This document shows positions 6,411-42,079 of a stretch of 64,000 nucleotides of DNA, one piece after another. Source of the stretch: Macrostomum lignano. Its lineage: Eukaryota. The stretch lies in NCBI GenBank assembly GCA_002269645.1, contig NIVC01001377.1, forward strand, positions 124,001-188,000, in the 5' to 3' direction. The stretch's first letter is position 1; each line of letters starts with the position of its first letter. Both the position numbers and the translations under genes were made by a program. The notes under the pieces are model-generated. The model ran no database searches. It saw nothing but the letters and a program-made list of their open reading frames with translations, and was not told the DNA's origin.

Positions 6411-6779
6411 GACATCCGCTGTGCCACTATGTTCCGCTATGTGCTGCTTTGCTGCCATTAAGCAGGACTAATGTGTTAACGAGAGGCACAAACCGTATCA
6501 GTGGCTGCCGTCAGCCGGCTTCAGTGAGCCCACCCGATTAGACGTTGTTATCGAGACCTCGATGGCAAAGTACAACCGGGCGCATCCAGGTTTTGAATCA
6601 TTTAAACAGCTGCCACCGTCATGGACAGGGCTATCGTTGTTCGAATTCGGTCAGAATTTCATGCGCCGAGTGCTCTTGTCCAACGAACTGGACGAAATTG
6701 AGCAGCTGCACTTCAACTGTGATCTGACGCGTGCCCCCCTGCTAACACAAGGGCATGGATTGCTGTCAACCCGCTGGAT

Positions 6780-7403: not shown

Positions 7404-8985
7404 TCACCCCAAGGAAGGGAGCCGGATGAGATGTCTCGGCGATTCTAGTCGTCTGGGCCGACAAGTTATCGATTGCAGTCGGTTTGGTCCGGAGCTGAAC
7501 TTCGGGCTCCATTCCAGAGCCTTAAGTTGACATGAGATCCCCATTTTATCCCCTTTATCCCCTGGGACCCCAAGGAAGGGAGCCGGATGGGATGTCTCGG
7601 CGATTCTAGTCGTCTGGGCCGACAAGTTATCGATTGCAGTCGGTTTGGTCCGGAGCTGAACTTCGGGCTCCATTCCAGAGCCTTAAGCTGACATGAGATC
7701 CCCATTTTATCCCCTTTATCCCCTGGGACCCCAAGGAAGGGAGCCGGATGGGATGTCTCGGCGATTCTAGTCGTCTGGGCCGACAAGTTATCGATTGCAG
7801 TCGGTTTGGTCCGGAGCTGAACTCGGGCTCCATTCCAGAGCCTTAAGTTGACATGAGATCCCCATTTTATCCCCTTTATCCCCTGGGACCCCAAGGAAAG
7901 GAAGCCGGATGAGATGTCTCGGCGATTCTAGTCGTCTGGGCCGACAAGTTATCGATTGCAGTCGGTTTGGTCCGGAGCTGAACTTCGGGCTCCATTCCAG
8001 AGCCTTAAGTTGACATGAGATCCCCATTTTATCCCCTTTATCCCCTGGGACCCCAAGGAAGGGAGCCGGATGGGATGTCTCGGCGATTCTAGTCGTCTGG
8101 GCCGACAAGTTATCGATTGCAGTCGGTTTGGTCCGGAGCTGAACTTCGGGCTCCATTCCAGAGCCTTAAGTTGACATGAGATCCCCATTTTATCCCCTTT
8201 ATCCCCTGGGACCCCAAGGAAGGGAGCCGGATGGGATGTCTCGGCGATTCTAGTCGTCTGGGCCGACAAGTTATCGATTGCAGTCGGTTTGGTCCGGAGC
8301 TGAACTTCGGGCTCCATTCCAGAGCCTTAAGTTGACATGAGATCCCCATTTTATCCCCTTTATCCCCTGGGACCCCAAGGAAGGGAGCCGGATGGGATGT
8401 CTCGGCGATTCTAGTCGTCTGGGCCGACAAGTTATCGATTGCAGTCGGTTTGGTCCGGAGCTGAACTTCGGGCTCCATTCCAGAGCCTTAAGTTGACATG
8501 AGATCCCCATTTTATCCCCTTTATCCCCTGGGACCCCAAGGAAGGGAGCCGGATGGGATGTCTCGGCGATTCTAGTCGTCTGGGCCGACAAGTTATCGAT
8601 TGCAGTCGGTTTGGTCCGGAGCTGAACTTCGGGCTCCATTCCAGAGCCTTAAGTTGACATGAGATCCCCATTTTATCCCCTTTATCCCCTGGGACCCCAA
8701 GGAAGGGAGCCGGATGGGATGTCTCGGCGATTCTAGTCGTCTGGGCCGACAAGTTATCGATTGCAGTCGGTTTGGTCCGGAGCTGAACTTCGGGCTCCAT
8801 TCCAGAGCCTTAAGCTGACATGAGATCCCCATTTTATCCCCTTTATCCCCTGGGACCCCAAGGAAGGGAGCCGGATGGGATGTCTCGGCGATTCTAGTCG
8901 TCTGGGCCGACAAGTTATCGATTGCAGTCGGTTTGGTCCGGAGCTGAACTTCGGGCTCCATTCTGGTGCTTAAGTTGACATCCCC
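7404..8985 (-). repeat. Right arm: the same 161-bp unit in inverted orientation, ~9.7 copies
   Basis: The same ORF text recurs on the minus strand at 7949, 8110, 8271, 8432 and 8593 (offset 161). Confidence 0.95.
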
Positions 8986-22250: not shown

Positions 22251-25200
22251 CTGGAATGATGCGAGATGCGTGTGGGTGACTTGTTCAGAGTTGGATGGAC
22301 AAAACAAGCAGGAGAGCTGAGAGTGCAGCTGCTGCAGCACTCAGACTGGCATCTCAAGCAGGAGAGCTGAGAGTCCAACCCAATCTCAACTCTCCTGAGT
22401 TTCGCTGCAATTTCTGCCCCAAGCTGCCAGCCTGTCGGAAGGCGCAATGCGGCAGTGAAAGCTGAACCGGTCAGACTCACCGATGGAGGCCCGAATCCAA
22501 GCGGTGAGCGGCTGCCTGCCGGGCCTCTGGGCTTCTGCAATGCGGGAAGGAAAGACAAGGAAAGACTAAGTTGAGTCTGAGATTCTGATGCGGCACAAAT
22601 CACTTCATTGAGTCGGAAACTCCAATTTTTTTCACGCGTAGAGCCGAGGAGGCACAGCTTCATCAAAATACCGGCGCTTTTTCAGTTAAGAAATTCAAAT
22701 AGCGGAGAGAAGGGCGGGCAGAAGCAGATGACCGACAGAAAGCAGGCAATGAGCCAGAGAGAGCCGTTCGCCCCTGGCAATGAGCCAGAGAGAGCCGTTT
22801 GCCCCTGGCAATGAGCCAGAGAGAGCCGTTTGCCCCTGGCAATGAGCCAGAGAGAGCCGTTCGCCCCTGGCAATGAGCCAGAGAGAGCCGTTCGCCCCTG
22901 GCAATGAGCCAGAGAGAGCCGTTCGCCCCTGGCAATGAGTCAGAGAGAGCCGTTCGCCCCTGGCAATGAGCCAGAGAGAGCCATTCGCCCCTCGCAATGA
23001 GCCAGAGAGAGCCGTTCGCCCCTGGCAATGAGCCAGAGAAGCCACAAATTTAGCGCGGAACGGCCGGAGGGAGAAGCAAGAGACGGCAATGCAGACTCGT
23101 GAAAAATATCTTACAGCCCTGACTGCCCGGTATAAAAAAGTGCAAATCGCGAGTATGCTCGCTAATGGAAGCGATTGGACAATAAAGTGAAAAACTGGAA
23201 ACTGTGATTATTTTGTTTTTTACTCAAGCATTACATGCAAACAAAATATTTTTTCACATGAGCCCGCTTCACTCCTTCATTTTTTGCCATTCCGCGCTGT
23301 GGGTCACTAAAATTATCGCTTGTCTCATCCGAAAATGTAAAATTCAAAAAATCTTTCTGTGTCTTTTCTGTCTTCTCTTTCTCTTCCTTTCTTTCTTCTT
23401 AACTTTTTCCCTTGTCCCCGTGTTCGCCTCTTCTCCAAAAACCAAGCAGGCTTACATTTTATAACTGAAAAATTCTAACAAGATTTTTCTGATAAAGTTG
23501 CAGAAATGCTTCACTAAAGCACGATGCAGTACTGAAAGGATTCGCGCAATTCTCGCCTCACTCACCCCGCTCGACTGGCATCCAGCAGCCGCAGCACCTG
23601 CCACTGCTCAAATCGCTCTGCCACTTGCGCACACGTCAGACCCCGACCGTCTCGATGGCTGGCATCCGCTCCTCTGTCCATCAGAGCCTTGGCTGCTCGC
23701 ACGTGACCGGCTTCGCACGCTCGTGACAGAGCAGTCCGACCCTGACTGTCTTCAGCACGCACTGACGCACCGAGATCGATGAGTTTCTCAATGAGCTCGT
23801 GATGACCTGCATCAGCTGCCAGCATGAGAGCAGTGGCTCCAGTGCTGTCTGGCAGATCGACATGCTCTGTGCTAACTCGCTCATCATTGATCAGTGTGAC
23901 AGCAAGTGCGACGTGTCTTTGAGATATGGAGAGATGGAGCAGCTGTGTGATGTGAGCTGGCTGCATTCGAGAGAGGGTGTCGGTGAGAGCAGAGTTCCTG
24001 CCTTCGATGGCCATTGCTGCAATGAAGCTGAGGATGGTGCTGGATTGGAAGAGCCAGTCGGATTCGAGGCCGCCGAGGGAGGCAACCACATCCTCGTGAA
24101 GACGAGAGCAAGCCTTGACTGCGTATGGGAAACGGAGATTCGCTCTCTGATCCGGACTTGAGAGACACGAGATGCACCTAAAGACTTCCCACTGGCCATT
24201 TTCTGCAGCAGACTCGGCAGCGTCGATGCAGCAGCGATCTCTGTTTGCTTGTTCAGCGACTTGTGACACGAGAAACTTGACGACTTCCCACTCAAAACTT
24301 CTTGCAGCATATTTGGCAGTGTCGATGCAGAAGCGATCTCTGTTTGCTTGGTCAGCGACTTCTGGCACGAGAAACTTGACGACTTCCCACTCACGATTTC
24401 TTGCAGCAGATTCGGCAGCTTTGATGCAGCAGCGATCTCTGTTTGCTTGGTCAGCGACTTGTGACACGAGAAAATTGACGACTTCCCAATGACCATAAAA
24501 TACAGCAAGTTTGGCAGCGTCGATGCAGCACTGTTCTCTGTTTGCCTGGTCAGCGACTTGTGGCACGATAAACTTGACGACTTCCCACTCACGATTTCTT
24601 GCAGCAGATTCGGCAGCTTTGATGCAGCAGCGATCTCTGTTTGCTTGGTCAGCGACTTGTGACACGAGAAACTTGACGACTTCTAAGTGACCATTTCTTG
24701 CAGCAGGTTCGGCAACCTCGACGCAGCAGCGATCTCTGTTTGCTTGGTCAGCGACTTGTGGCACGATAAACTTGACGACTTCCCAGCCACGATTTCTTGC
24801 AGCAGATTCGGCAGCGTCGATGCAGCAGCGATCTCTGTTTGCTTGGTCAGCGACTTGTGACACGAGAAACTTGACGACTTCTAAGTGACCATTTCTTGCA
24901 GCAGGTTCGGCAGCGTCGATGCAGCAGCGATCTCTGTTTGCTTGGTCAGCGACTTGTGACACGAGAAACTTGACGACTTCTAAGTGACCATTTCTTGCAG
25001 AAGGTTCGGCAGCGTCGATGCAGCAGCGATCTCTGTTTGCTTGGTCAGCGACTTGTGACACGAGAAACTTGACGACTTCTAAGTGACCATTTGTTGCAGC
25101 AGATTCGGCAGCTTTGATGCAGCAGCGATCTCTGTTTGCTTGGTCAGCGACTTGTGGCACGAGAAACTTGACGACTTTTAAGTGACCATTTCTTGCAGCA

Positions 25201-28200
25201 GATTTGGCAGCTTCGATGCAGCAGCGATCTCTGTTTGCTTGGTCAGCGACTTGTGACACGAGAAACTTGACGACTTCTGAGTGACCATTTGTTGCAGCAG
25301 ATTCGGCAGCTTTGATGCAGCAGCGATCTCTGTTTGCTTGGTCAGCGACTTGTGACACGAGAAACTTGACGACTTTCCAATGACCATAAAATACAGCAAG
25401 TTTGGCAGCGTCGATGCAGCACTGTTCTCTGTTTGCCTGGTCAGCGACTTCTGGCACGAGAAACTTGACGACTTCCCACTCACAAAATCTTGCAGCAGAT
25501 TCGGCAGCGTCGATGCAGCAGCGATCTCTGTTTGCTTGGTCAGGGACTTGTGACACGAGAAACTTGACGACTTCCCACTCACGATTTCTTGCAGCAGATT
25601 CGGCAGCGTCGATGCAGCAGCGATCTCTGTTTGCTTGGTCAGCGACTTGTGGCACGATAAACTTGACGACTTCTAAGTGACCATTTCTTGCAGCAGGTTC
25701 GGCAGCCTCGACACAGCAGCGATCTCTGTTTGCTTGGTCAGCGACTTGTGACACGAGAAACTTGACGACTTCTGAGTGACCATTTGTTGCAGCAGATTCG
25801 GAAGCGTCGATGCAGCAGCGATCTTTATTTGCATGGTCAGTGACTTGTGACACAAGAAACTTGACAACTTCTAAGTGACCATTTCTTGCAGAAGGTTCGG
25901 CAGCGTCGATGCAGCAGCGATCTCTGTTTGCTTGGTCAGCGACTTGTGACACGGGAAACTTGACGACTTCTAAGTGACCATTTCTTGCAGCAGGTTCGGC
26001 AGCCTCGACGCAGCAGCGATCTCTGTTTGCTTGGTCAGCGACTTGTGACACGAGAAACTTGACGACTTCTAAGTGACCATTTCTTGCAGCAGGTTCGGCA
26101 GCCTCGACGCAGCAGCGATCTCTGTTTGCTTGGTCAGCGACTTGTGACACGAGAAACTTGACGACTTCTAACTGACCATTTCTTGCAGCAGGTTCGGCAA
26201 CCTCGACGCAGCAGCGATCTCTGTTTGCTTGGTCAGCGACTTGTGACACGAGAAACTTGACGACTTCCCACTCACAAAATCTTGCAGCAGATTCGGCAGC
26301 TTTGATGCAGCAGCGATCTCTGTTTGCTTGGTCAGCGACTTGTGACACGATAAACTTGACGACTTCCCACTCACGATTTCTTGCAGCAGATTCGGCAGCG
26401 TCGATGCAGCAGCGATCTCTGTTTGCTTGGTCAGCGACTTGTGACACGAGAAACTTGACGACTTCTAAGTGACCATTTCTTGCAGCAGGTTCGGCAGCCT
26501 CGACGCAGCAGCGATCTCTGTTTGCTTGGTCAGTGACTTGTGACACGAGAAACTTGACGACTTCTAAGTGACCATTTCTTGCAGCAGGTTCGGCAGCCTC
26601 GACGCAGCAGCGATCTCTGTTTGCTTGGTCAGCGACTTGTGACACGAGAAACTTGACGACTTCCCACTCACAAAATCTTGCAGCAGATTCGGCAGCTTTG
26701 ATGCAGCAGCGATCTCTGTTTGCTTGGTCAGCGACTTGTGACACGAGAAACTTGACGATTTCTGAGTGACCATTTGTTGCAGCAGATTCGGCAGCGTCGA
26801 TGCAGCAGCGATCTCTGTTTGCTTGGTCAGCGACTTGTGACACGAGAAACTTGACGACTTCTAAGTGACCACTTCTTGCAGTAGATTCGGCAGCTTTGAT
26901 GCAGCAGCGATCTCTGTTTGCTTGGTCAGCGACTTGTGACACGAGAAACTTGATGATTTCTGAGTGACCATTTCTTGCAGCACGTTCGGCAGCCTCGACG
27001 CAACAGCGATCTCTGTTTGCTTGGTCAGCGACTTGTGGCACGAGAAACTTGACGAGTTCCCACTCACAACTTCTTGCAGCAGATTTGGCAGCGTCGATGC
27101 AGCAGCTATCTCTGTTTGCTTGGTCAGCGACTTGTGGCACGAGAAACTTGACGACTTCCCACTGATCATTTTCTACAGCAGATTTGGCAGCGTCGATGCA
27201 GCAGCGATCTCTGTTTGCTTGGTCAGCGACTTGTGGCACGAGAAACTTGACGACTTTTAAGTGACCATTTCTTGCAGCACTTTCGGCAGCCTCGACGCAA
27301 CAGCGATCTCTGTTTGCTTGGTCAGCGACTTGTGGCACGAGAAACTTGACGAGTTCCCACTCACAACTTCTTGCAGCAGATTTGGCAGCGTCGATGCAGC
27401 AGCGATCTCTGTTTGCTTGGTCAGCGACTTGTGGCACGAGAAACTTGACGACTTCCCACTGACCATTTTCTACAGCAGATTTGGCAGCGTCGATGCAGCA
27501 GCGATCTCTGTTTGCTTGGTCAGCGACTTGTGACACGAGAAACTTAACGACTTTCCGCTGACGATATCTTGCAGCAGGTTCGGCAGCCTTGACGCAACAG
27601 CGATCTCTGTTTGCTTGGTCAGCGACTTGTGACACGAGAAACTTGACGACTTCTAAGTGACCATTTCCTGCAGCAGGTTCGGCAGCCTCGACGCAACAGC
27701 GATCTCTGTTTGCTTGGTCAGCGACTTGTGACACGAGAAACTTGACGACTTTCCGCCGACGATATCTTGCAGCAGGTTTTGCAGCCTCGACGCAGCAGCG
27801 ATCTCTGTTTGCTTGGTCAGCGACTTGTGACACGAGAAACTTGACGACTTCTAAGTGACCATTTGTTGCAGCAGATTCGGCAGCTTTGATGCAGCAGCGA
27901 TCTCTGTTTGCTTGGTCAGCGACTTGTGGCACGAGAAACTTGACGACTTCTAAGTGACCATTTCTTGCAGCAGGTTCGGCAGCCTCGGCGCAGCAGCGAT
28001 CTCTGTTTGCTTGGTCAGCGACTTGTGACACAAGAAACTTGACGACTTCTAAGTGACCATTTCTTGCAGCAGGTTCGGCAGCCTCGACGCAGCAGCGATC
28101 TCTGTTTGCTTGGTCAGCGACTTGTGGCACGAGAAACTTGACGACTTCCCACTCACGATTTCTTGCAGCAGATTCGGCAGCGTCGATGCAGCAGCGATCT

Positions 28201-31200
28201 CTGTTTGCTTGGTCAGCGACTTGTGGCACGATAAACTTGACGACTTCCCACTCACGATTTCTTGCAGCAGATTCGGCAGCGTCGATGCAGCAGCGATCTC
28301 TGTTTGCTTGGTCAGCGACTTGTGACACGAGAAACTTGACGACTTTCCGCTGACGATATCTTGCAGCAGGTTCATCAGCCTTGACGCAGCAGCGATCTCT
28401 GTTTGCTTGGTCAGCGACTTGTGACACGAGAAACTTGACGACTTCCCACTCACAAAATCTTGCAGCAGATTCGGCAGCGTCGATGCAGCAGCGATCTCTG
28501 TTTGCTTGGTCAGCGACTTGTGGCACGAGAAACTTGACGAGTTCTGAGTGACCATTTGTTGCAGCAGATTCGGCAGCTTTGATGCAGCAGCGATCTCTGT
28601 TTGCTTGGTCAGCGACTTGTGGCACGAGAAACTTGACGACTTTTAAGTGACCATTTGTTGCAGCAGATTCGGCAGCTTTGATGCAGCAGCGATCTCTGTT
28701 TGCTTGGTCAGCGACTTGTGGCACGAGAAACTTGACGACTTCTAAGTGACCATTTCTTGCAGCAGGTTCGGCAGCCTCGGCGCAGCAGCGATCTCTGTTT
28801 GCTTGGTCAGCGACTTGTGACACAAGAAACTTGACGACTTCTAAGTGACCATTTCTTGCAGCAGGTTCGGCAGCCTCGACGCAGCAGCGATCTCTGTTTG
28901 CTTGGTCAGCGACTTGTGGCACGAGAAACTTGACGACTTCCCACTCACGATTTCTTGCAGCAGATTCGGCAGCGTCGATGCAGCAGCGATCTCTGTTTGC
29001 TTGGTCAGCGACTTGTGGCACGATAAACTTGACGACTTCCCACTCACGATTTCTTGCAGCAGATTCGGCAGCGTCGATGCAGCAGCGATCTCTGTTTGCT
29101 TGGTCAGCGACTTGTGACACGAGAAACTTGACGACTTTCCGCTGACGATATCTTGCAGCAGGTTCATCAGCCTTGACGCAGCAGCGATCTCTGTTTGCTT
29201 GGTCAGCGACTTGTGACACGAGAAACTTGACGACTTCCCACTCACAAAATCTTGCAGCAGATTCGGCAGCGTCGATGCAGCAGCGATCTCTGTTTGCTTG
29301 GTCAGCGACTTGTGGCACGAGAAACTTGACGAGTTCTGAGTGACCATTTGTTGCAGCAGATTCGGCAGCTTTGATGCAGCAGCGATCTCTGTTTGCTTGG
29401 TCAGCGACTTGTGGCACGAGAAACTTGACGACTTTTAAGTGACCATTTGTTGCAGCAGATTCGGCAGCTTTGATGCAGCAGCGATCTCTGTTTGCTTGGT
29501 CAGCGACTTGTGATACGAGAAACTTGACGCTTCCCACTGACCATTTCTTGCAGTAGATTCGGCAGCTTTGATGCAGCAGCGATCTCTGTTTGCTTGGTCA
29601 GCGACTTGTGACACGAGAAACTTGACGATTTCTGAGTGACCATTTGTTGCAGCAGATTCGGCAGCGTCGATGCAGCAGCGATCTCTGTTTGCTTGGTCAG
29701 CGACTTGTGGCACGAGAAACTTGACGACTTCTAAGTGACCATTTCTTGCAGCACGTTCGGCAGCCTCGACGCAACAGCGATCTCTGTTTGTTTGGTCAGC
29801 GACTTGTGGCACGTGAAACTTGACGAGTTCCCACTCAAGACTTCTTGCAGCAGATTCGGCAGCGTCGATGCAGCAGCGATCTCTGTTTGCTTGGTCAGCG
29901 ACTTGTGGCACGAGAAACTTGACGACTTTTAAGTGACCATTTCTTGCAGCAGATTTGGCAGCTTCGATGCAGCAGCGATTTCTGTTTGCTGGGTCAGCGA
30001 CTTGTGACACGAGAAAATTGACGACTTCTAAGTGACCATTTCTTGCAGCAGATTCGGCAGCTAAGATGCAGCAGCGATCTCTGTTTGCTTGGTCAGTGAC
30101 TTGTGACACGAGAAACTTGACGACTTCTAAGTGACCATTTCTTGCAGCAGGTTCGGCAGCCTCGACGCAGCAGCGATCTCTGTTTGCTTGGTCAGCGACT
30201 TGTGACACGAGAAACTTGACGACTTCCCACTCACAAAATCTTGCAGCAGATTCGGCAGCTTTGATGCAGCAGCGATCTCTGTTTGCTTGGTCAGCGACTT
30301 GTGACACGAGAAACTTGACGACTTTCCGCTGACGATATCTTGCAGCAGGTTCGGCAGCCTTGACGCAGCAGCGATCTCTGTTTGCTTGGTCAGCGACTTG
30401 TGACACGAGAAACTTGACGACTTCCCACTCACAAAATCTTGCAGCAGATTCGGCAGCGTCGATGCAGCAGCGATCTCTGTTTGCTTGGTCAGCGACTTGT
30501 GGCACGAGAAACTTGACGAGTTCTGAGTGACCATTTGTTGCAGCAGATTCGGCAGCTTTGATGCAGCAGCGATCTCTGTTTGCTTGGTCAGCGACTTGTG
30601 GCACGAGAAACTTGACGACTTTTAAGTGACCATTTGTTGCAGCAGATTCGGCAGCTTTGATGCAGCAGCGATCTCTGTTTGCTTGGTCAGCGACTTGTGG
30701 CACGAGAAACTTGACGACTTTTAAGTGACCATTTCTTGCAGCAGATTTGGCAGCTTCGATGCAGCAGCGATCTCTGTTTGCTTGGTCAGCGACTTGTGAC
30801 ACGAGAAACTTGACGACTTCTGAGTGACCATTTGTTGCAGCAGATTCGGCAGCTTTGATGCAGCAGCGATCTCTGTTTGCTTGGTCAGCGACTTGTGACA
30901 CGAGAAACTTGACGACTTTCCAATGACCATAAAATACAGCAAGTTTGGCAGCGTCGATGCAGCACTGTTCTCTGTTTGCCTGGTCAGCGACTTCTGGCAC
31001 GAGAAACTTGACGACTTCCCACTCACAACTTCTTGCAGCAGATTTGGCAGCGTCGATGCAGCAGCTATCTCTGTTTGCTTGGTCAGCGACTTGTGGCACG
31101 AGAAACTTGACGACTTCCCACTGATCATTTTCTACAGCAGATTTGGCAGCGTCGATGCAGCAGCGATCTCTGTTTGCTTGGTCAGCGACTTGTGGCACGA

Positions 31201-34200
31201 GAAACTAGACGACTTTTAAGTGACCATTTCTTGCAGCACTTTCGGCAGCCTCGACGCAACAGCGATCTCTGTTTGCTTGGTCAGCGACTTGTGGCACGAG
31301 AAACTTGACGAGTTCCCACTCACAACTTCTTGCAGCAGATTTGGCAGCGTCGATGCAGCAGCGATCTCTGTTTGCTTGGTCAGCGACTTGTGGCACGAGA
31401 AACTTGACGACTTCCCACTGACCATTTTCTACAGCAGATTTGGCAGCGTCGATGCAGCAGCGATCTCTGTTTGCTTGGTCAGCGACTTGTGACACGAGAA
31501 ACTTACGACTTTCCGCTGACGATATCTTGCAGCAGGTTTGGCAGCCTTGACGCAACAGCGATCTCTGTTTGCTTGGTCAGCGACTTGTGACACGAGAAAC
31601 TTGACGACTTCTAAGTGACCATTTCCTGCAGCAGGTTCGGCAGCCTCGACGCAACAGCGATCTCTGTTTGCTTGGTCAGCGACTTGTGACACGAGAAACT
31701 TGACGACTTTCCGCCGACGATATCTTGCAGCAGGTTTTGCAGCCTCGACGCAGCAGCGATCTCTGTTTGCTTGGTCAGCGACTTGTGACACGAGAAACTT
31801 GACGACTTCTAAGTGACCATTTGTTGCAGCAGATTCAGCAGCTTTGATGCAGCAGCGATCTCTGTTTGCTTGGTCAGCGACTTGTGGCACGAGAAACTTG
31901 ACGACTTCTAAGTGACCATTTCTTGCAGCAGGTTCGGCAGCCTCGGCGCAGCAGCGATCTCTGTTTGCTTGGTCAGCGACTTGTGACACAAGAAACTTGA
32001 CGACTTCTAAGTGACCATTTCTTGCAGCAGGTTCGGCAGCCTCGACGCAGCAGCGATCTCTGTTTGCTTGGTCAGCGACTTGTGGCACGAGAAACTTGAC
32101 GACTTCCCACTCACGATTTCTTGCAGCAGATTCGGCAGCGTCGATGCAGCAGCGATCTCTGTTTGCTTGGTCAGCGACTTGTGGCACGATAAACTTGACG
32201 ACTTCCCACTCACGATTTCTTGCAGCAGATTCGGCAGCGTCGATGCAGCAGCGATCTCTGTTTGCTTGGTCAGCGACTTGTGACACGAGAAACTTGACGA
32301 CTTTCCGCTGACGATATCTTGCAGCAGGTTCATCAGCCTTGACGCAGCAGCGATCTCTGTTTGCTTGGTCAGCGACTTGTGACACGAGAAACTTGACGAC
32401 TTCCCACTCACAAAATCTTGCAGCAGATTCGGCAGCGTCGATGCAGCAGCGATCTCTGTTTGCTTGGTCAGCGACTTGTGGCACGAGAAACTTGACGAGT
32501 TCTGAGTGACCATTTGTTGCAGCAGATTCGGCAGCTTTGATGCAGCAGCGATCTCTGTTTGCTTGGTCAGCGACTTGTGGCACGAGAAACTTGACGACTT
32601 TTAAGTGACCATTTGTTGCAGCAGATTCGGCAGCTTTGATGCAGCAGCGATCTCTGTTTGCTTGGTCAGCGACTTGTGGCACGAGAAACTTGACGACTTC
32701 TAAGTGACCATTTCTTGCAGCAGGTTCGGCAGCCTCGGCGCAGCAGCGATCTCTGTTTGCTTGGTCAGCGACTTGTGACACAAGAAACTTGACGACTTCT
32801 AAGTGACCATTTCTTGCAGCAGGTTCGGCAGCCTCGACGCAGCAGCGATCTCTGTTTGCTTGGTCAGCGACTTGTGGCACGAGAAACTTGACGACTTCCC
32901 ACTCACGATTTCTTGCAGCAGATTCGGCAGCGTCGATGCAGCAGCGATCTCTGTTTGCTTGGTCAGCGACTTGTGGCACGATAAACTTGACGACTTCCCA
33001 CTCACGATTTCTTGCAGCAGATTCGGCAGCGTCGATGCAGCAGCGATCTCTGTTTGCTTGGTCAGCGACTTGTGACACGAGAAACTTGACGACTTTCCGC
33101 TGACGATATCTTGCAGCAGGTTCATCAGCCTTGACGCAGCAGCGATCTCTGTTTGCTTGGTCAGCGACTTGTGACACGAGAAACTTGACGACTTCCCACT
33201 CACAAAATCTTGCAGCAGATTCGGCAGCGTCGATGCAGCAGCGATCTCTGTTTGCTTGGTCAGCGACTTGTGGCACGAGAAACTTGACGAGTTCTGAGTG
33301 ACCATTTGTTGCAGCAGATTCGGCAGCTTTGATGCAGCAGCGATCTCTGTTTGCTTGGTCAGCGACTTGTGGCACGAGAAACTTGACGACTTTTAAGTGA
33401 CCATTTGTTGCAGCAGATTCGGCAGCTTTGATGCAGCAGCGATCTCTGTTTGCTTGGTCAGCGACTTGTGATACGAGAAACTTGACGCCTTCCCACTGAC
33501 CATTTCTTGCAGTAGATTCGGCAGCTTTGATGCAGCAGCGATCTCTGTTTGCTTGGTCAGCGACTTGTGACACGAGAAACTTGACGATTTCTGAGTGACC
33601 ATTTGTTGCAGCAGATTCGGCAGCGTCGATGCAGCAGCGATCTCTGTTTGCTTGGTCAGCGACTTGTGGCACGAGAAACTTGACGACTTCTAAGTGACCA
33701 TTTCTTGCAGCACGTTCGGCAGCCTCGACGCAACAGCGATCTCTGTTTGCTTGGTCAGCGACTTGTGGCACGTGAAACTTGACGAGTTCCCACTCAAGAC
33801 TTCTTGCAGCAGATTCGGCAGCGTCGATGCAGCAGCGATCTCTGTTTGCTTGGTCAGCGACTTGTGGCACGAGAAACTTGACGACTTTTAAGTGACCATT
33901 TCTTGCAGCAGATTTGGCAGCTTCGATGCAGCAGCGATTCTGTTTGCTGGTCAGCGACTTGTGACACGAGAAAATTGACGACTTCTAAGTGACCATTTCT
34001 TGCAGCAGATTCGGCAGCTAAGATGCAGCAGCGATCTCTGTTTGCTTGGTCAGTGACTTGTGACACGAGAAACTTGACGACTTCTAAGTGACCATTTCTT
34101 GCAGCAGGTTCGGCAGCCTCGACGCAGCAGCGATCTCTGTTTGCTTGGTCAGCGACTTGTGACACGAGAAACTTGACGACTTCCCACTCACAAAATCTTG

Positions 34201-37200: not shown

Positions 37201-40200
37201 TGCTTGGTCAGCGACTTGTGGCACGATAAACTTGACGACTTCCCACTCACGATTTCTTGCAGCAGATTCGGCAGCGTCGATGAGCAGCGATCTCTGTTTG
37301 CTTGGTCAGCGACTTGTGACACGAGAAACTTGACGACTTTCCGCTGACGATATCTTGCAGCAGGTTCATCAGCCTTGACGCAGCAGCGATCTCTGTTTGC
37401 TTGGTCAGCGACTTGTGACACGAGAAACTTGACGACTTCCCACTCACATCTTGCAGCAGATTCGGCAGCGTCGATGCAGCAGCGATCTCTGTTTGCTTGG
37501 TCAGCGACTTGTGGCACGAGAAACTTGACGAGTTCTGAGTGACCATTTGTTGCAGCAGATTCGGCAGCTTTGATGCAGCAGCGATCTCTGTTTGCTTGGT
37601 CAGCGACTTGTGGCACGAGAAACTTGACGACTTCTAAGTGACCATTTCTTGCAACACTTTCGGCAGCCTCGACGCAGCAGCGATCTCTGTTTGCTTGGTC
37701 AGCGACTTGTGGCACGAGAAACTTGACGACTTCCCACTCACGATTTTTTGCAGCAGATTCGGCAGCGTCGATGCAGCAGCGATCTCTGTTTGCTTGGTCA
37801 GCGACTTGTGACACGAGAAACTTGACGACTTTCCGCTGACGATAACTTGCAGCAGGTTCGGCAGCCTTGACGCAGCAGCGATCTCTGTTTGCTTGGTCAG
37901 CGACTTGTGACACGAGAAACTTGACGACTTCCCACTCACAAAATCTTGCAGCAGATTCGGCAGCGTCGATGCAGCAGCGATCTCTGTTTGCTTGGTCAGC
38001 GACTTGTGGCACGAGAAACTTGACGACTTCTGAGTGACCATTTGTTGCAGCAGATTCGGCAGCTTTGATGCAGCAGCGATCTCTGTTTGCTTGGTCAGCG
38101 ACTTGTGGCACGAGAAACTTGACGACTTTTAAGTGACCATTTGTTGCAGCAGATTCGGCAGCTTTGATGCAGCAGCGATCTCTGTTTGCTTGGTCAGCGA
38201 CTTGTGATACGAGAAACTTGACGCCTTCCCACTGACCATTTCTTGCAGTAGATTCGGCAGCTTTGATGCAGCAGCGATCTCTGTTTGCTTGGTCAGCGAC
38301 TTGTGACACGAGAAACTTGACGACTTTTAAGTGACCATTTGTTGCAGCAGATTCGGCAGCTTTGATGCAGCAGCGATCTCTGTTTGCTTGGTCAGCGACT
38401 TGTGGCACGAGAAACTTGACGACTTTTAAGTGACCATTTCTTGCAGCAGATTTGGCAGCTTCGATGCAGCAGCGATCTCTGTTTGCTTGGTCAGCGACTT
38501 GTGACACGAGAAACTTGACGACTTCTGAGTGACCATTTGTTGCAGCAGATTCGGCAGCTTTGATGCAGCAGCGATCTCTGTTTGCTTGGTCAGCGACTTG
38601 TGACACGAGAAACTTGACGACTTTCCAATGACCATAAAATACAGCAAGTTTGGCAGCGTCGATGCAGCACTGTTCTCTGTTTGCTGGTCAGCGACTTCTG
38701 GCACGAGAAACTTGACGACTTCCCACTCACAAAATCTTGCAGCAGATTCGGCAGCGTCGATGCAGCAGCGATCTCTGTTTGCTTGGTCAGGACTTGTGAC
38801 ACGAGAAACTTGACGACTTCCCACTCACGATTTCTTGCAGCAGATTCGGCAGCGTCGATGCAGCAGCGATCTCTGTTTGCTTGGTCAGCGACTTGTGGCA
38901 CGATAAACTTGACGACTTCTAAGTGACCATTTCTTGCAGCAGGTTCGGCAGCCTCGACACAGCAGCGATCTCTGTTTGCTTGGTCAGCGACTTGTGACAC
39001 GAGAAACTTGACGACTTCTGAGTGACCATTTGTTGCAGCAGATTCGGAAGCGTCGATGCAGCAGCGATCTTTTTTGCTGGTCAGTGACTTGTGACACAGA
39101 AACTTGACAACTTCTAAGTGACCATTTCTTGCAGAAGGTTCGGCAGCGTCGATGCAGCAGCGATCTCTGTTTGCTTGGTCAGCGACTTGTGACACGGAAA
39201 CTTGACGACTTCTAAGTGACCATTTCTTGCAGCAGGTTCGGCAGCCTCGACGCAGCAGCGATCTCTGTTTGCTTGGTCAGCGACTTGTGACACGAGAAAC
39301 TTGACGACTTCTAAGTGACCATTTCTTGCAGCAGGTTCGGCAGCCTCGACGCAGCAGCGATCTCTGTTTGCTTGGCCAGCGACTTGTGACACGAGAAACT
39401 TGACGACTTCTAACTGACCATTTCTTGCAGCAGGTTCGGCAACCTCGACGCAGCAGCGATCTCTGTTTGCTTGGTCAGCGACTTGTGACACGAGAAACTT
39501 GACGACTTCCCACTCACAAAATCTTGCAGCAGATTCGGCAGCTTTGATGCAGCAGCGATCTCTGTTTGCTTGGTCAGCGACTTGTGACACGATAAACTTG
39601 ACGACTTCCCACTCACGATTTCTTGCAGCAGATTCGGCAGCGTCGATGCAGCAGCGATCTCTGTTTGCTTGGTCAGCGACTTGTGACACGAGAAACTTGA
39701 CGACTTCTAAGTGACCATTTCTTGCAGCAGGTTCGGCAGCCTCGACGCAGCAGCGATCTCTGTTTGCTTGGTCAGTGACTTGTGACACGAGAAACTTGAC
39801 GACTTCTAAGTGACCATTTCTTGCAGCAGGTTCGGCAGCCTCGACGCAGCAGCGATCTCTGTTTGCTTGGTCAGCGACTTGTGACACGAGAAACTTGACG
39901 ACTTCCCACTCACAAAATCTTGCAGCAGATTCGGCAGCTTTGATGCAGCAGCGATCTCTGTTTGCTTGGTCAGCGACTTGTGACACGAGAAACTTGACGA
40001 TTTCTGAGTGACCATTTGTTGCAGCAGATTCGGCAGCGTCGATGCAGCAGCGATCTCTGTTTGCTTGGTCAGCGACTTGTGACACGAGAAACTTGACGAC
40101 TTCTAAGTGACCACTTCTTGCAGTAGATTCGGCAGCTTTGATGCAGCAGCGATCTCTGTTTGCTTGGTCAGCGACTTGTGACACGAGAAACTTGACGACT

Positions 40201-42079
40201 TCTAAGTGACCACTTCTTGCAGTAGATTCGTCAGCGTTGATGCAGCAGCGATCTCTGTTTGCTTGGTCAGCGACTTGTGACACGAGAAACTTGATGATTT
40301 CTGAGTGACCATTTCTTGCAGCACGTTCGGCAGCCTTAACGCAACAGCGATCTCTGTTTGCTTGGTCAGCGACTTGTGACACGAGAAACTTGACGACTTC
40401 TAAGTGACCATTTCTTGCAGCAGGTTCGGCAGCCTCGACGCAACAGCGATCTCTGTTTGCTTGGTCAGCGACTTGTGACACGAGAAACTTGACGACTTTC
40501 CGCCGACGATATCTTGCAGCAGGTTTTGCAGCCTCGACGCAGCAGCGATCTCTGTTTGCTTGGTCAGCGACTTGTGACACGAGAAACTTGACGACTTCTA
40601 AGTGACCATTTGTTGCAGCAGATTCAGCAGCTTTGATGCAGCAGCGATCTCTGTTTGCTTGGTCAGCGACTTGTGGCACGAGAAACTTGACGACTTCTAA
40701 GTGACCATTTCTTGCAGCAGGTTCGGCAGCCTCGGCGCAGCAGCGATCTCTGTTTGCTTGGTCAGCGACTTGTGACACAAGAAACTTGACGACTTCTAAG
40801 TGACCATTTCTTGCAGCAGGTTCAGCAGCCTCGACGCAGCAGCGATCTCTGTTTGCTTGGTCAGCGACTTGTGGCACGAGAAACTTGACGACTTCCCACT
40901 CACGATTTCTTGCAGCAGATTCGGCAGCGTCGATGCAGCAGCGATCTCTGTTTGCTTGGTCAGCGACTTGTGGCACGAGAAACTTGACGACTTTTAAGTG
41001 ACCATTTGTTGCAGCAGATTCGGCAGCTTTGATGCAGCAGCGATCTCTGTTTGCTTGGTCAGCGACTTGTGATACGAGAAACTTGACGCCTTCCCACTGA
41101 CCATTTCTTGCAGTAGATTCGGCAGCTTTGATGCAGCAGCGATCTCTGTTTGCTTGGTCAGCGACTTGTGACACGAGAAACTTGATGATTTCTGAGTGAC
41201 CATTTGTTGCAGCAGATTCGGCAGCGTCGATGCAGCAGCGATCTCTGTTTGCTTGGTCAGCGACTTGTGGCACGAGAAACTTGACGACTTCTAAGTGACC
41301 ATTTCTTGCAGCACGTTCGGCAGCCTCGACGCAACAGCGATCTCTGTTTGCTTGGTCAGCGACTTGTGGCACGTGAAACTTGACGAGTTCCCACTCAAGA
41401 CTTCTTGCAGCAGATTCGGCAGCGTCGATGCAGCAGCGATCTCTGTTTGCTTGGTCAGCGACTTGTGGCACGAGAAACTTGACGACTTTTAAGTGACCAT
41501 TTCTTGCAGCAGATTTGGCAGCTTCGATGCAGCAGCGATTTCTGTTTGCTGGGTCAGCGACTTGTGACACGAGAAAATTGACGACTTCTAAGTGACCATT
41601 TCTTGCAGCAGATTCGGCAGCTAAGATGCAGCAGCGATCTCTGTTTGCTTGGTCAGCGACATGTGGCACGAGAAACTTGACGTCTTTTAAGCGACCATTT
41701 GTTGCAGCATCTGCAGCAGCTTGTACGACTTCTAAGTGACCATCTTGTGCAGCCCGTACAGCTTTTTGTGAGATGTCAGTCACGGCTGCTGTCAGAGTGG
41801 CAGATGTCAGTCACGGCTGCTGTCAGAGTGGCAGATGTCAGTCACGGCTGCTGTCAGAGTGGCAGGTGTTTCAAAGGTTTGTGCAGCCGGTTGGCAGAAA
41901 GATTTTACCGCCTCATCTCTCAACTGCCCCCCCCCTTTTGCAGCCTCTGGCGAGGCCACCCCCTGACCACCCCGGCCTGAGCAGCCGAAACTTCTCTCCC
42001 GAGCATGAGCGCTGAGTCCGCCGCCTTCGCCTCTGTGCACCCAGCATGGCAACGGAGAGGCTGCGGCTGCAGCGGCCAC
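19865..42079 (-). CDS. Giant ankyrin-repeat / cGAS-like (Mab-21 family) nucleotidyltransferase fusion. Model: ~42079-23566, 22534-22481, 22250-21880, 21309-19865 (~6,700 aa if indels are corrected)
   Basis: Donors GTGAGT at 23565, 22480 and 21879 and acceptors TTGCAG, TTCCAG and CTGCAG give phases 2/2, 2/2 and 1/1, keeping one frame from the ANK exon to the NTase stop. The 5' end is uncertain, and there are many 1-bp indels between 29.5 and 39.2 kb. Confidence 0.8.
22745..23040. repeat. Intronic 31-bp minisatellite (GAGCCAGAGAGAGCCGTTCGCCCCTGGCAAT), ~9.5 copies
   Basis: GAGCCAG at 22751 and 22782. Lies in the intron between the ANK exon and the 54-nt linker exon. Confidence 0.93.
23566..24160 (-). 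CDS. Unique linker plus ~3 canonical ankyrin repeats closing the ANK exon
   Basis: DSTGATALMLAADAGHHELIEKLIDLGA, DSQGRTALSRACEAGHVRAAKALMDRGA and DGRGLTCAQVA match the ankyrin consensus. Confidence 0.9.
24160..41750 (-). repeat. Coding tandem array of 99-bp / 33-aa ankyrin-like units (VVKFLVSQVADQANRDRCCIDAAESAARNGHLE), ~177 copies
   Basis: 99-bp periodicity over ~17.5 kb. AAxxGHLEVVKFL is the ankyrin helix-turn-helix core. ORFs of 1991, 587, 813, 520 and 889 aa tile the array. Confidence 0.95.
41771..41864. repeat. 31-bp unit x3 (AGATGTCAGTCACGGCTGCTGTCAGAGTGGC) at the 5' end of the ANK ORF
   Basis: AGATGTCAG at 41771, 41802 and 41833. Confidence 0.92.

What the first reader, a model, noticed from the sequence alone, without database searches (positions are those of the whole stretch)
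24160..41750. Repeat variation is confined to the predicted binding face and uses a small module alphabet
Seen: the segment VVKFLV(S/P)QVADQANRDRCC is nearly invariant even at DNA level, while the next ~14 residues switch among about a dozen recurring types. Examples: VEAAEPAARNGHLE, IKAAESAATNGHSE, IDAAESAARFCEWE, IDAAESAARNREWE, VKADEPAARYRQRK, IDAAKLAVFYGHWK, IDAAKSAVENGQWE, IDAAESAARSLEWE. Established: the xx of AAxxG are target-contacting positions randomised in DARPins, and fungal NLRs (het-d/het-e) use highly conserved repeats with hypervariable sites that are shuffled to change specificity. Inference: a natural DARPin-like combinatorial code, with the constant segment as the recombination track.
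Basis: partly seen in the sequence, partly recalled or inferred. Interest (0 to 1): 0.9.

Follow-up and report, generated by a model that had tools for sequence, protein, structure and literature searches.

The report
Giant ankyrin-repeat array in flatworm gene
A flatworm (Macrostomum) gene for a cGAS-like enzyme carries 177 near-identical 33-residue ankyrin-type repeats, and their recurring "modules" come mainly from recent copying of multi-repeat blocks, not from a working combinatorial binding code.

Summary
Window 24186-41684 (minus strand) holds 177 tandem 99-bp units that encode an ankyrin-type repeat. Codons 8-19 are almost fixed (nucleotide diversity 0.019). Codons 20-33 are polymorphic (0.177), with 41 distinct blocks, of which 12 cover 68% of intact units.

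- **Module order is not shuffled.** About 70% of units lie in 5-19-unit blocks that recur with at most 2 differences per unit.
- **Recent substitutions are spread evenly** along the unit.
- **The "constant" loop varies between paralogues,** so its uniformity here reflects recent amplification or homogenisation, not constraint.
- **The DARPin match is partial.** Variable sites form a stripe on one predicted helix plus the turn. They include the AAxxG positions, but not the other DARPin contact positions, which are invariant.
- **Selection evidence is modest.** dN/dS in the variable block is about 2.1.

The array is the 5' exon of a Macrostomum lignano-type gene that continues into an intact cGAS/Mab21-like nucleotidyltransferase. 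The family has more than 35 paralogues, each with 1 to at least 9 such repeats. As assembled, the array lacks a start codon and has one TAG and 16 units with deletions, which may be assembly artefacts. A syntenic copy has no array.

Most likely this is a runaway higher-order amplification of already diversified repeats. Whether it functions is uncertain.

The parts
24186..41684 (-). Array of 177 tandem 99-bp units, each encoding a 33-residue ankyrin-type repeat. 161 units are intact in length. 16 units (numbers 25-122, counted from the 5' end) carry 1-3 bp deletions. One unit has an in-frame TAG at 31205-31207.
   Evidence: TRF. Segmentation and unit alignment. Pfam Ank_2, Ank_4 and Ank. AlphaFold2 model of units 124-131 with pLDDT 91.3. 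Foldseek hits to ankyrin and DARPin proteins.
41685..41783 (-). Degenerate N-terminal repeat or cap (VTDISQKAVRAAQDGHLEVVQAAADAATNGRLKD). The open frame starts only 10 codons after a TGA and holds no ATG.
   Evidence: Sequence. It aligns to residues 10-62 of paralogue P0026, whose first 9 residues, including the Met, have no counterpart here.
41771..41869 (.). 31-bp minisatellite (3.2 copies) that overlaps and replaces the expected start-codon region. The syntenic locus L001 has 11.8 copies.
   Evidence: TRF. Sequence.
23566..24185 (-). 3' end of the same exon: a divergent linker, then canonical ankyrin repeats (GATALMLAADAGHHELIEKLIDLGASV...). It ends at a canonical GTGAGT splice donor.
   Evidence: Pfam Ank, Ank_2 and Ank_3 at residues 421-527 of the tail query. 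Homology to M. lignano proteins. Donor context.
22745..23043 (.). 31-bp minisatellite (9.7 copies) inside the intron between the ankyrin exon and the nucleotidyltransferase exon. It is also present in L001.
   Evidence: TRF. BLAST against L001.
21884..22252 (-). Exon 2 (approximate limits): nucleotidyltransferase core, with the G-S motif (about 22081) and the D-x-D motif DSDIDW (about 22021). It ends at a GTGAGT donor.
   Evidence: ORF translation. G55, S56, S76, D77, I78 and D79 are invariant or nearly so in 24 family members. Coordinates and splice context.
19865..21310 (-). Exon 3: the rest of the cGAS/Mab21-like fold (Mab-21_C about 20801-21082) plus a helical C-terminal extension of about 270 residues that is conserved in the family. 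The frame is intact to the stop codon.
   Evidence: Pfam PF20266 at 30.7 bits against a cut-off of 24.1. AlphaFold2 pLDDT 82 and pTM 0.84. Foldseek to cGAS and MAB21L1, E = 3e-7. 98% identical to the L001 gene with dN/dS 0.35.

Best explanation
The array is a very recent, nested (higher-order) tandem amplification of the repeat-coding 5' exon of a lineage-specific ankyrin + cGAS/Mab21-like nucleotidyltransferase gene of Macrostomum lignano or a very close relative.

The ancestral exon probably held about 10-12 repeats. These had already diverged at the exposed stripe of the long helix and the following turn, which are the same sites that differ among repeats of other family members.

Unequal crossing-over or replication slippage then copied blocks of 8, 11-19 and about 40 units. 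The few pre-existing repeat types therefore recur many times (the 'small alphabet'). The rest of the unit looks invariant even at synonymous sites because all copies are young or homogenised, not because that segment is specially constrained.

Mutations since the amplification fall evenly along the unit.

Shown here: the repeat anatomy, the block structure, the gene context, the family, and the absence of the array in a syntenic copy.

Inferred: the order of events, and that this oversized array is not itself a tuned binding code. It is probably selectively neutral or decaying. The variable-stripe pattern it inherited most likely reflects ligand or partner recognition in the family.
For: - **Block structure.** A 19-unit run recurs at an offset of 40 units with 2 differences in 1881 bp. 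A 13-unit run recurs with 4 differences. An 11-unit run is present three times. An 8-unit block is tandemly duplicated. In all, 127 of 177 units lie in such runs of at least 5 units.
- **Order far from random.** There are 73 distinct adjacent pairs against 130 expected, and 104 distinct 4-mers against 173.
- **Recent substitutions are uniform.** Within-type substitutions number 30 in the constant part and 15 in the variable part (expected 57:42, p = 0.23), with 38 non-synonymous to 7 synonymous.
- **The constant loop is free to vary in the family.** Positions 7-10, 13, 14 and 17 carry 1.7-2.6 bits between paralogue repeats. Positions 21, 24, 25, 28 and 29 vary both in paralogues and in the array.
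- **The block types are old.** Types such as ARNGQWE, ARNRQWE and AATNGHLE also occur in other genes (P0002, P0056, P0054).
- **Ordinary family members are much smaller.** They have 1 to at least 9 repeats, and one has 6.8 units at 82% DNA identity.
- **The syntenic copy has no array.** L001 (dS 0.025 in the effector exon) has about 640 bp where the window has 17.6 kb.
- **The genome is prone to tandem expansion.** TRF intervals cover about 46% of the window, or about 18% without this array.
- **Lesions as assembled.** There is no ATG, one TAG, and 16 frameshifted units.
- **No counterpart in databases.** No near-identical repeat protein exists among 5.8 billion sequences.
Against: - The frame is kept in 161 of 177 units, with only one stop in about 5,800 codons.
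- All 27 indel bases are deletions. Of these, 19 sit at or next to copy-specific variant bases, against 5.7 expected (p = 5e-8). That pattern suggests consensus artefacts in repeat pile-ups rather than real decay, so the true array may be open.
- The variable block shows dN/dS of about 2.1.
- The two halves of the variable block occur in recombinant combinations, as expected for a diversifying receptor domain.
- The downstream exons and their splice sites are intact, and the effector exon shows dN/dS of 0.35.
- The paralogue P0052 shows a similar pattern on a smaller scale, with at least 9 near-identical repeats.
- An upstream exon or trans-spliced leader could supply the start codon. This was not testable here.
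Confidence: 0.6

Rival explanations
1. The array is a functional, rapidly diversifying recognition domain of a cGAS-like receptor. [quoted passage not shown] In that model, concerted evolution keeps the scaffold uniform, positive selection diversifies a few surface sites, and unequal recombination changes repeat number and order. The frameshifts would be assembly artefacts.
For: - High internal conservation: 90% at DNA level and 86% mean column identity at protein level.
- Variation is concentrated at a helix-face stripe (positions 21, 24/25, 28/29) plus the turn.
- dN/dS in the variable block is about 2.1.
- The two halves of the variable block occur in recombinant combinations.
- Repeat number differs greatly between the two syntenic copies, 177 against 0.
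- The deletions have an artefact-like signature.
- The effector exons are intact and under some constraint.
- Fusions of ankyrin repeats to cGLRs are known (PMC9980059).
- The fungal precedent includes positive selection on the concave face of ankyrin repeats (PMC4986451).
Against: - 177 repeats far exceed the roughly 7-13 or more per locus in the P. anserina isolates tabulated. From my own knowledge, known ankyrin domains have about 24-34.
- The order is explained by block duplication.
- Post-amplification changes are evenly spread.
- There is no start codon, and the TAG is a substitution, not an indel.
- Some deletions are shared by two block copies but absent from the third, which fits inheritance.
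- No expressed or annotated counterpart was found.
Confidence: 0.27
2. Copy number and part of the block structure are assembly artefacts, that is, over-expansion or mis-joining of reads from a shorter array or from homeologous arrays.
For: - The deletions cluster at copy-specific variants in the interior of the array. This shows that the consensus there was built from mixed pile-ups.
- Some block copies are nearly identical (2 differences in 1.9 kb).
- The source assembly is not in the public contig collection that was searched.
Against: - The blocks differ by private substitutions and are nested at three levels, which assemblers do not invent.
- Both flanks are unique and collinear with L001.
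- Unique coding sequence in the window is clean.
Confidence: 0.08
3. The array is a donor or acceptor store for programmed somatic diversification, in the manner of lamprey VLR cassettes, so that individual cells express different module orders.
For: Only the modular appearance, and the presence of recombinant half-blocks.
Against: - There are no flanking cassettes, recombination signals or separate incomplete germline gene.
- The units are in one continuous exon in frame with the effector.
- No somatic data are available.
Confidence: 0.02

Closest known systems
Highly internally conserved ANK/TPR/WD repeats of fungal NLRs (Podospora het-d, het-e, nwd genes; Dyrka et al. 2014, PMC4986451)
   Same: - Near-identical tandem repeats of a solenoid-forming motif.
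- Variation limited to a few positions with an excess of amino-acid change.
- Evidence of exchange between repeats.
- Large repeat-number differences between copies.
- The repeats are attached to a signalling or effector domain of innate-immunity type.
   Different: - The organism is an animal, not a fungus. The source paper finds such repeats in only 0.8% of metazoan repeat proteins.
- The partner domain is a cGAS/Mab21-like nucleotidyltransferase, not NACHT or NB-ARC.
- There are 177 units, against about 7-13 or more per locus in the P. anserina isolates tabulated.
- The order is dominated by block duplication.
- The coding status is doubtful.
DARPins (designed consensus ankyrin libraries; Binz et al. 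2003, cited from my own knowledge)
   Same: - 33-residue consensus-like ankyrin units (AARNGHLEVVKxL).
- A fixed scaffold.
- Variable residues at positions 13 and 14 (AAxxG).
- DARPins are the best structural matches to the model.
   Different: - DARPin positions 2, 3 and 33 are invariant here, and position 5 is only I/V.
- The beta-turn region is predicted to be helical, merged into a 17-residue helix.
- The framework G15, H16 and L17 positions vary.
- The TPLH motif is replaced by DAAE.
cGAS-like receptors fused to ankyrin or TPR repeats (Li et al. 2023, PMC9980059)
   Same: A cGAS/Mab21-fold enzyme with ankyrin repeats attached, proposed there as ligand- or protein-interaction modules.
   Different: [quoted passage not shown]
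- Here there is a family of more than 35 members in one flatworm.
- The repeats are N-terminal, of an unusual long-helix subtype, and in one locus hugely amplified.
- Enzymatic activity is untested.
TAL effector repeats (from my own knowledge)
   Same: - Units of 33-35 residues that are almost identical at DNA level.
- Each unit is a two-helix hairpin.
- Hypervariable residues sit at the end of one helix and in the inter-helix turn.
- Repeat order is changed by recombination.
   Different: - There is no sequence or fold relationship (ankyrin solenoid here).
- There is no evidence that one repeat reads one ligand unit.
- Variation spans about 8 positions, not 2.
Higher-order-repeat satellites and coding macrosatellites (for example alpha-satellite HORs and VNTR exons; from my own knowledge)
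   Same: - Multi-unit blocks are more alike than neighbouring units.
- Duplications are nested.
- Copy number is unstable.
- The surrounding genome is rich in tandem arrays.
   Different: The unit is a protein-coding structural repeat that remains almost entirely in frame inside an otherwise intact gene.

Membership tests
Ankyrin repeat (Pfam clan Ank) | Repeat period of about 33 residues | tested here: met
   The period is 99 bp, and 161 of 177 units are exactly 99 bp.
Ankyrin repeat (Pfam clan Ank) | Sequence match to curated Ank models above their cut-offs | tested here: met
   On array-only sequence (window 40986-41783), Ank_2 scores 97.4 bits (cut-off 27.3), Ank_4 75.6 (22.7) and Ank 60.5 (21.1).
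Ankyrin repeat (Pfam clan Ank) | Stacked helix-turn-helix solenoid resembling solved ankyrin domains | tested here: met
   The AlphaFold2 8-unit model has pLDDT 91.3. All 50 Foldseek PDB matches listed contain an ankyrin-repeat or DARPin domain, with E down to 2.6e-6 and TM up to 0.73. This is a prediction, not a solved structure.
Ankyrin repeat (Pfam clan Ank) | Canonical TPLH motif and beta-hairpin or loop between repeats | tested here: not met
   The sequence has DAAE in place of TPLH and no Gly in the loop. DSSP on the model gives one 17-residue helix (QANRDRCCIDAAESAAR) through the region that is a beta-turn in canonical repeats. This places it as a divergent subtype.
DARPin-like variable-position scheme | Variability at helix-1 positions 13 and 14 (AAxxG) | tested here: met
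   Codons 28 and 29 carry 1.37 and 1.38 bits with 7 and 4 residue types. In paralogue repeats they carry 2.8 and 2.5 bits.
DARPin-like variable-position scheme | Variability at beta-turn and loop positions 2, 3, 5 and 33 | tested here: not met
   The corresponding residues R17, C18 and R15 carry at most 0.29 bits. Position 5 (codon 20) only switches I/V. The position mapping is by gap-free alignment on AAxxGH, which is my inference.
DARPin-like variable-position scheme | Framework residues (G15, H16, L17) kept constant | tested here: not met
   Codons 30-32 carry 1.47-1.65 bits, as G/R/C, H/E/Q and L/W/S/R.
Fungal-NLR-type highly internally conserved repeats | More than 85% identity between repeats over at least 100 residues | tested here: met
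   Mean pairwise difference is 9.6 of 99 nt. Mean column identity of 8-unit stretches is 86%.
Fungal-NLR-type highly internally conserved repeats | Positive selection at a few sites on the interaction surface | tested here: inconclusive
   dN/dS is 2.1 in codons 20-33 by Nei-Gojobori and by tree parsimony (p = 0.02). Recombination and tiny site numbers weaken the test. No coordinates were available to measure exposure. Only the i, i+3/4, i+7 spacing on the predicted helix supports a single face.
Fungal-NLR-type highly internally conserved repeats | Repeat-number polymorphism and repeat reshuffling between alleles | tested here: inconclusive
   A syntenic copy (L001) has 0 units against 177, but whether it is an allele or a homeologue is unknown. 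No second array was available to compare order. Within the array, the order reflects block duplication.
Fungal-NLR-type highly internally conserved repeats | Attachment to a NOD (NACHT or NB-ARC) domain | tested here: not met
   The downstream exons encode a Mab-21/cGAS-like fold, and no NOD domain was detected.
cGAS-like receptor / Mab21 nucleotidyltransferase family | Mab-21 C-terminal domain and cGAS-like bilobed fold | tested here: met
   PF20266 scores 30.7 bits against a cut-off of 24.1. Foldseek to mouse and human cGAS gives E = 3e-7 and target-normalised TM 0.54-0.57, and MAB21L1 gives E = 1e-5.
cGAS-like receptor / Mab21 nucleotidyltransferase family | Catalytic G-S ... [DE]-x-[DE] motif plus a third acidic residue | tested here: inconclusive
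   GSYAEGW and DSDIDW are present. S56 is invariant, and G55, S76, D77, I78 and D79 are nearly invariant, in 24 relatives. The third acidic residue could not be assigned.
cGAS-like receptor / Mab21 nucleotidyltransferase family | Ligand-activated synthesis of a nucleotide second messenger | not testable with these tools
   This needs biochemistry.
Higher-order-repeat tandem array | Multi-unit blocks repeated at higher identity than neighbouring units share | tested here: met
   Blocks of 8-19 units recur with 0.05-0.55 differences per unit, against 9.6 between random units. There is a strong deficit of distinct k-mers of unit types.

The most novel reading that the evidence does not exclude
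The Macrostomum ANK-Mab21 genes are an animal innate-immune receptor family. In this reading, a cGAS-like enzyme is coupled to a highly internally conserved, hypervariable ankyrin sensor that diversifies by repeat amplification, exchange and positive selection. That would be convergent with fungal NLRs. The 177-unit locus would be either a functional extreme or a germline reservoir from which new repeat combinations spread to paralogues by gene conversion.
Probability: 0.15. Interest if true: 0.8.

Novelty: new variant of a known kind. Interest (0 to 1): 0.45.

Why it matters
If the family pattern reflects recognition, it would have three consequences.
- It would extend the 'conserved scaffold with hypervariable surface' strategy of fungal NLRs and engineered DARPins to an animal cGAS-like receptor family.
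- It would do so in a phylum said to mostly lack immune cGLRs (PMC9980059).
- It would give a tractable model, because transgenesis exists for M. lignano (PMC5730564), for asking what non-nucleic-acid ligands cGLRs can sense.

The 177-unit array shows how a coding repeat can run away into a 17.5-kb higher-order satellite inside a gene.

It is also a caution for scans. A small recurring 'alphabet' in a tandem array can be produced by block duplication alone. Frameshifts in the interior of such arrays may be consensus artefacts.

Tried and rejected
- **Fuzzy-regex anchoring of units.** It gave spurious spacings, so I replaced it with alignment-guided segmentation.
- **Search for the same array elsewhere.**
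  - Exact-product look-ups of two window ORFs found nothing.
  - A protein search with six units found no repeat more than 64% identical. The remaining hits are generic ankyrin proteins, including giant-virus and oomycete ones at 35-45%. I therefore rejected a viral or microbial origin. The flanks and the effector exons are Macrostomum.
- **Test of the 'constant segment as recombination track' idea.** I used the conditional entropy of flanking markers given the upstream or downstream variable block. The values are 0.47 against 0.52 bits, or 0.82 against 1.12 with half-blocks. The difference is too small to support the idea.
- **Stop-codon test for selection on the frame.** Only about 46 recent substitutions were counted, one of them the TAG. 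By my own rough estimate, which was not computed with a tool, this is too few to distinguish selection on the frame from chance.
- **Sequence search of the effector against PDB.** It gave only marginal hits (E about 0.05). The fold search was needed.
- **Literature searches.** Macrostomum with ankyrin, and Macrostomum with cGAS, found no description of this family.
- **Readings considered and set aside.**
  - A TALE-like one-repeat-one-unit code: no evidence.
  - VLR-like somatic assembly: no cassettes or signals.
  - Pure assembly artefact: nested private variants argue against it.
- **Not done.** I did not map variable sites on 3D coordinates, because the structure tool returns only confidence and secondary structure.

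Full report
**1. What is there**

Tandem Repeats Finder reports one array of period 99 bp, 177.2 copies and 90% matches at 24196-41709. The coding sense is the minus strand. In that frame the consensus unit reads VVKFLVSQVADQANRDRCCIDAAESAARNGHLE.

Alignment-guided segmentation gives 177 units from 41684 down to 24186.
- 161 units are exactly 99 bp.
- 16 units (numbers 25-122 from the 5' end) are 96-98 bp. They carry 27 deleted bases and no insertion.
- One unit has an in-frame TAG at 31205-31207.

Because of these lesions, the array appears as about a dozen ORFs. The last 54 units plus the tail form one ORF of 1991 codons (23562-29537).

**2. Check of the observation**

| Measure | Constant part | Variable part (codons 20-33) |
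|---|---|---|
| Amino-acid entropy | at most 0.36 bits at codons 2-19, except codon 5 (0.6) and codon 7 (S/P, 0.94) | 1.0-1.8 bits at codons 20, 21, 25, 28-32 |
| Nucleotide diversity | 0.019 (codons 8-19), 0.034 (codons 1-19) | 0.177 |
| Sites with a common variant | 4 of 57 | 20 of 42 |

So the contrast is real and large. 'About a dozen types' is a fair summary of a skewed distribution: 41 distinct 14-residue blocks in 160 intact units, with the top 12 covering 68%.

**3. Synonymous against non-synonymous change**

Among 71 distinct intact units, two methods give these values.

| Method | Segment | dS or S | dN or N | dN/dS | Note |
|---|---|---|---|---|---|
| Nei-Gojobori | constant | 0.046 | 0.043 | 0.93 | 0.49 without codons 1 and 7 |
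| Nei-Gojobori | variable | 0.115 | 0.247 | 2.1 | |
| Parsimony on NJ tree | constant | S 12.5 | N 54.5 | 1.23 | not different from neutral |
| Parsimony on NJ tree | variable | S 11.5 | N 84.5 | 2.15 | p = 0.02 |

This suggests diversifying change in the variable block. It rests on about 10 synonymous sites, and recombination violates the tree assumption.

Two nuances matter.
- Synonymous divergence is also about 2.5-fold higher in the variable block, so part of the contrast is age or homogenisation, not selection.
- Counted as events, the constant part is only 2-fold poorer. Its variants are rare rather than absent.

**4. Module order**

Clustering units at 3 or fewer average differences gives 38 types. 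Written 5' to 3', the array reads:

YGNJHOKCAABPARZLHFAACFAAAISACDTBGBOKBDECaBbECCAABcARLLHFAACFAAAISACDTBGBBDEFAUGNJHOKBDECCAABBDECCAABPAdeMVWMQBGBBDEFAUGNJHfKBDECCAABBDECCAABPAEgMVWMJLHFAACFAAAIhACDQBGBIIijXQXkl

Long blocks are obvious.
- LHFAACFAAAISACD(T/Q)BGB occurs three times.
- A super-block of about 40 units (BDEFAU-GNJH.K-BDECCAAB-BDECCAAB-PA..MVWM) occurs twice.
- The 8-unit BDECCAAB block is itself tandemly duplicated.

The numbers agree with this picture.
- A 19-unit run recurs at an offset of 40 units with 2 differences in 1881 bp. A 13-unit run recurs with 4 differences, and an 11-unit run occurs three times with 4-6 differences.
- 127 of 177 units lie in such runs of at least 5 units.
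- Random unit pairs differ at 9.6 of 99 positions.
- Distinct adjacent pairs number 73, against 130 under shuffling (minimum 120 in 1000 shuffles).

The 'small alphabet' is therefore chiefly the footprint of nested block duplication, that is, a higher-order repeat.

**5. Old and recent layers of variation**

I counted substitutions that distinguish copies within a type and treated them as post-amplification changes.
- There are 45 unique events: 30 in codons 1-19 and 15 in codons 20-33. This does not differ from the 57:42 expected by length (p = 0.23).
- They split 38 non-synonymous to 7 synonymous.

The confinement of variation to the variable block belongs to the older, between-type layer.

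Those older types are shared with repeats of other genes of the family, for example ARNGQWE, ARNRQWE and AATNGHLE in P0002, P0056 and P0054.

Exchange between repeats has occurred. The half-blocks IDAAES and IKAAES each combine with RFCEWE, RNREWE and TNGHSE. That shows exchange inside the variable block.

Linkage of the flanking markers (codons 1, 5 and 7) is nearly as tight across the invariant stretch as across the unit junction (0.52 against 0.47 bits). The idea that the constant segment is the preferred recombination track is not supported, and it is not excluded either.

**6. Fold and position of the variable sites**

- Pfam ankyrin models match array-only sequence well above their cut-offs (Ank_2 at 97 bits).
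- An AlphaFold2 model of units 124-131, using other stretches of the array as its alignment, has pLDDT 91.3.
- Every one of its 50 listed Foldseek PDB matches is an entry containing an ankyrin-repeat or DARPin domain.

Secondary structure per unit in the model is as follows.
- A 10-residue helix (LEVVKFLVSQ).
- A 3-residue turn (VAD).
- A 17-residue helix (QANRDRCCIDAAESAAR).
- A 3-residue turn (NGH).

The stretch that forms the beta-turn 'finger' in canonical repeats is thus predicted to be helical, and TPLH is replaced by DAAE.

I aligned the unit without gaps on AAxxGH to the DARPin consensus. The DARPin numbering is from my own knowledge of Binz et al. 2003.
- DARPin positions 33, 2 and 3 correspond to R15, R17 and C18, which are invariant. 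Position 5 only switches I/V.
- The framework G15, H16 and L17 positions (codons 30-32) are among the most variable.

Codons 21, 24/25 and 28/29 follow an i, i+3/4, i+7 spacing. That places them on one face of the long helix, running into the turn.

**7. Is the constant segment constrained?**

Across 22 distinct full-length repeats taken from paralogous proteins:
- Positions 7-10, 13, 14 and 17 carry 1.7-2.6 bits.
- Positions 21, 24, 25, 28 and 29 carry 1.9-2.8 bits.
- The G-H-L turn carries 0.7-1.3 bits.

So the loop that is frozen in this array is free to vary in the family. Its uniformity here reflects recent common ancestry or homogenisation. The helix-stripe positions vary everywhere, which suggests specificity positions for the family.

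**8. Gene and organism**

The array exon ends in a divergent linker and canonical ankyrin repeats, followed by a canonical GTGAGT donor directly after ...SRAG.

Two further exons on the same strand encode the effector.
- Exon 2 (about 22252-21884) has the GSYAEGW and DSDIDW motifs.
- Exon 3 (about 21310-19865) continues to the stop codon.

Evidence for the effector fold:
- Pfam Mab-21_C passes its cut-off.
- An AlphaFold2 model has pLDDT 82 and pTM 0.84.
- Its best Foldseek matches are cGAS (E = 3e-7) and MAB21L1.

The best protein match is a Macrostomum lignano hypothetical protein at 97% identity. More than 35 M. lignano paralogues share the ANK + Mab-21 architecture. One paralogue (P0024) carries a second nucleotidyltransferase module.

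Family members have far fewer repeats of this type.
- Annotated paralogues carry 1 to at least 9.
- The paralogous locus L002 has 6.8 units at 82% DNA identity.

The literature describes ANK-cGLR fusions as a minority architecture. [quoted passage not shown] I found no paper on this flatworm family.

**9. Comparison with a second copy**

Locus L001 (M. lignano assembly GCA_002269645.1, contig NIVC01000085.1) is collinear with both flanks at 92-98% identity.
- Its effector exon differs at 18 of 1491 bases: 8 synonymous and 10 non-synonymous, with dS 0.025 and dN/dS 0.35.
- Between the 5' minisatellite and the tail it holds about 640 bp with no 99-bp unit and an MGQKLSS start in another frame. 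The window holds 17.6 kb there.

So two very recently diverged copies, alleles or homeologues, differ by 0 against 177 units. The window's own source is not in the contig collection. No protein with near-identical repeats exists among 5.8 billion sequences; the best is 64% identical.

**10. Is the array coding?**

*Against:*
- The frame opens only 10 codons after a TGA and has no ATG.
- Paralogue P0026 aligns from its residue 10. The Met region is replaced by a 31-bp minisatellite, whose unit length is not a multiple of 3.
- There is one TAG, and there are 16 frameshifted units.

*For:*
- All indels are deletions.
- 13 of 27 fall in homopolymers, against 33% expected by position.
- 19 of 27 lie at or next to a base where the nearest intact relative differs from the array consensus, against 5.7 expected (p = 5e-8). 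I read this as the signature of consensus-calling on mixed repeat pile-ups.
- Unique coding sequence in the window has no indels relative to L001.

*Against the artefact reading:*
- Deletions in units 25, 26 and 30 are shared by their block copies 63, 64 and 68 but are absent from the third copy (159, 160, 164). That pattern fits inheritance.

I put the chance that most deletions are artefacts at roughly 60%. Even then, the missing start codon and the TAG remain.

**11. Verdict**

The mechanism I think most likely (0.6) is a runaway, nested amplification of about 10-12 already-diversified ankyrin-type repeats inside a member of a flatworm ANK-cGAS-like family.
- The recurring modules are explained by block copying.
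- The frozen scaffold is explained by youth or homogenisation.

The fungal-NLR-like reading, a functional and actively diversifying sensor, keeps about 0.27. Assembly over-expansion gets about 0.08, and somatic diversification about 0.02.

The family-level pattern is the part most worth following up: a conserved scaffold, a variable helix stripe, modest dN/dS above 1, and attachment to a cGAS-like enzyme.

Noticed in passing
window 41771-41869 and L001 9123-9484: A 31-bp minisatellite sits exactly where the start codon of the ankyrin exon should be. Its unit contains the first codons of the open frame (…GTG ACT GAC ATC T). It has 3.2 copies in the window and 11.8 in the syntenic locus. It may have destroyed the original ATG.
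   Followed up: partly
window 1-64000: The merged TRF intervals, 32 in number, cover about 29.3 kb, which is 46% of the window, or about 18% without the ankyrin array. Many of the same minisatellite families recur in L001 and L002. This genome seems unusually prone to tandem expansion.
   Followed up: partly
window 5670-6417 and 7406-8981: Two arrays of a 161-bp unit (4.7 and 9.8 copies, 98% matches) have consensus units that look like reverse complements of each other. They form an inverted pair about 1 kb apart.
   Followed up: no
window 22745-23043 (intron) and L001 11681-12071: A 31-bp minisatellite lies inside the intron between the ankyrin exon and the nucleotidyltransferase exon. It is conserved in position in the syntenic copy, with 9.7 against 12.7 copies.
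   Followed up: no
protein P0024 (M. lignano paralogue): One family member carries a second nucleotidyltransferase module after the first (…GSYSEGWGNSLTTLDGRTDSNSDIDVMCLI…). This is a tandem cGLR-like fusion reminiscent of OAS2 and OAS3.
   Followed up: no
window 19865-20800 (minus strand), residues about 330-600 of the effector query: A largely helical C-terminal extension of about 270 residues follows the Mab-21 fold. It is conserved across the family (for example the ...DWAWRFCLPCDSPPRFPFLPEF... motif) and modelled with good confidence, but it has no Pfam match. Its function is unknown.
   Followed up: no
L001 9830-9870, window 42114 (minus strand), and paralogues P0025 and P0054: Several family members start with MGQxxS, an N-myristoylation-like motif. 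The window has an out-of-frame ATGGGTCAG (MGQLSL) 331 nt upstream of the array frame. L001 has MGQKLSS just before its tail, in another frame.
   Followed up: partly
window 23566-24185 against L001 9860-10450: The ankyrin tail is only about 90% identical in protein between the two syntenic copies, while the Mab-21 exon is 98% identical. The N-terminal recognition part evolves faster than the effector.
   Followed up: partly
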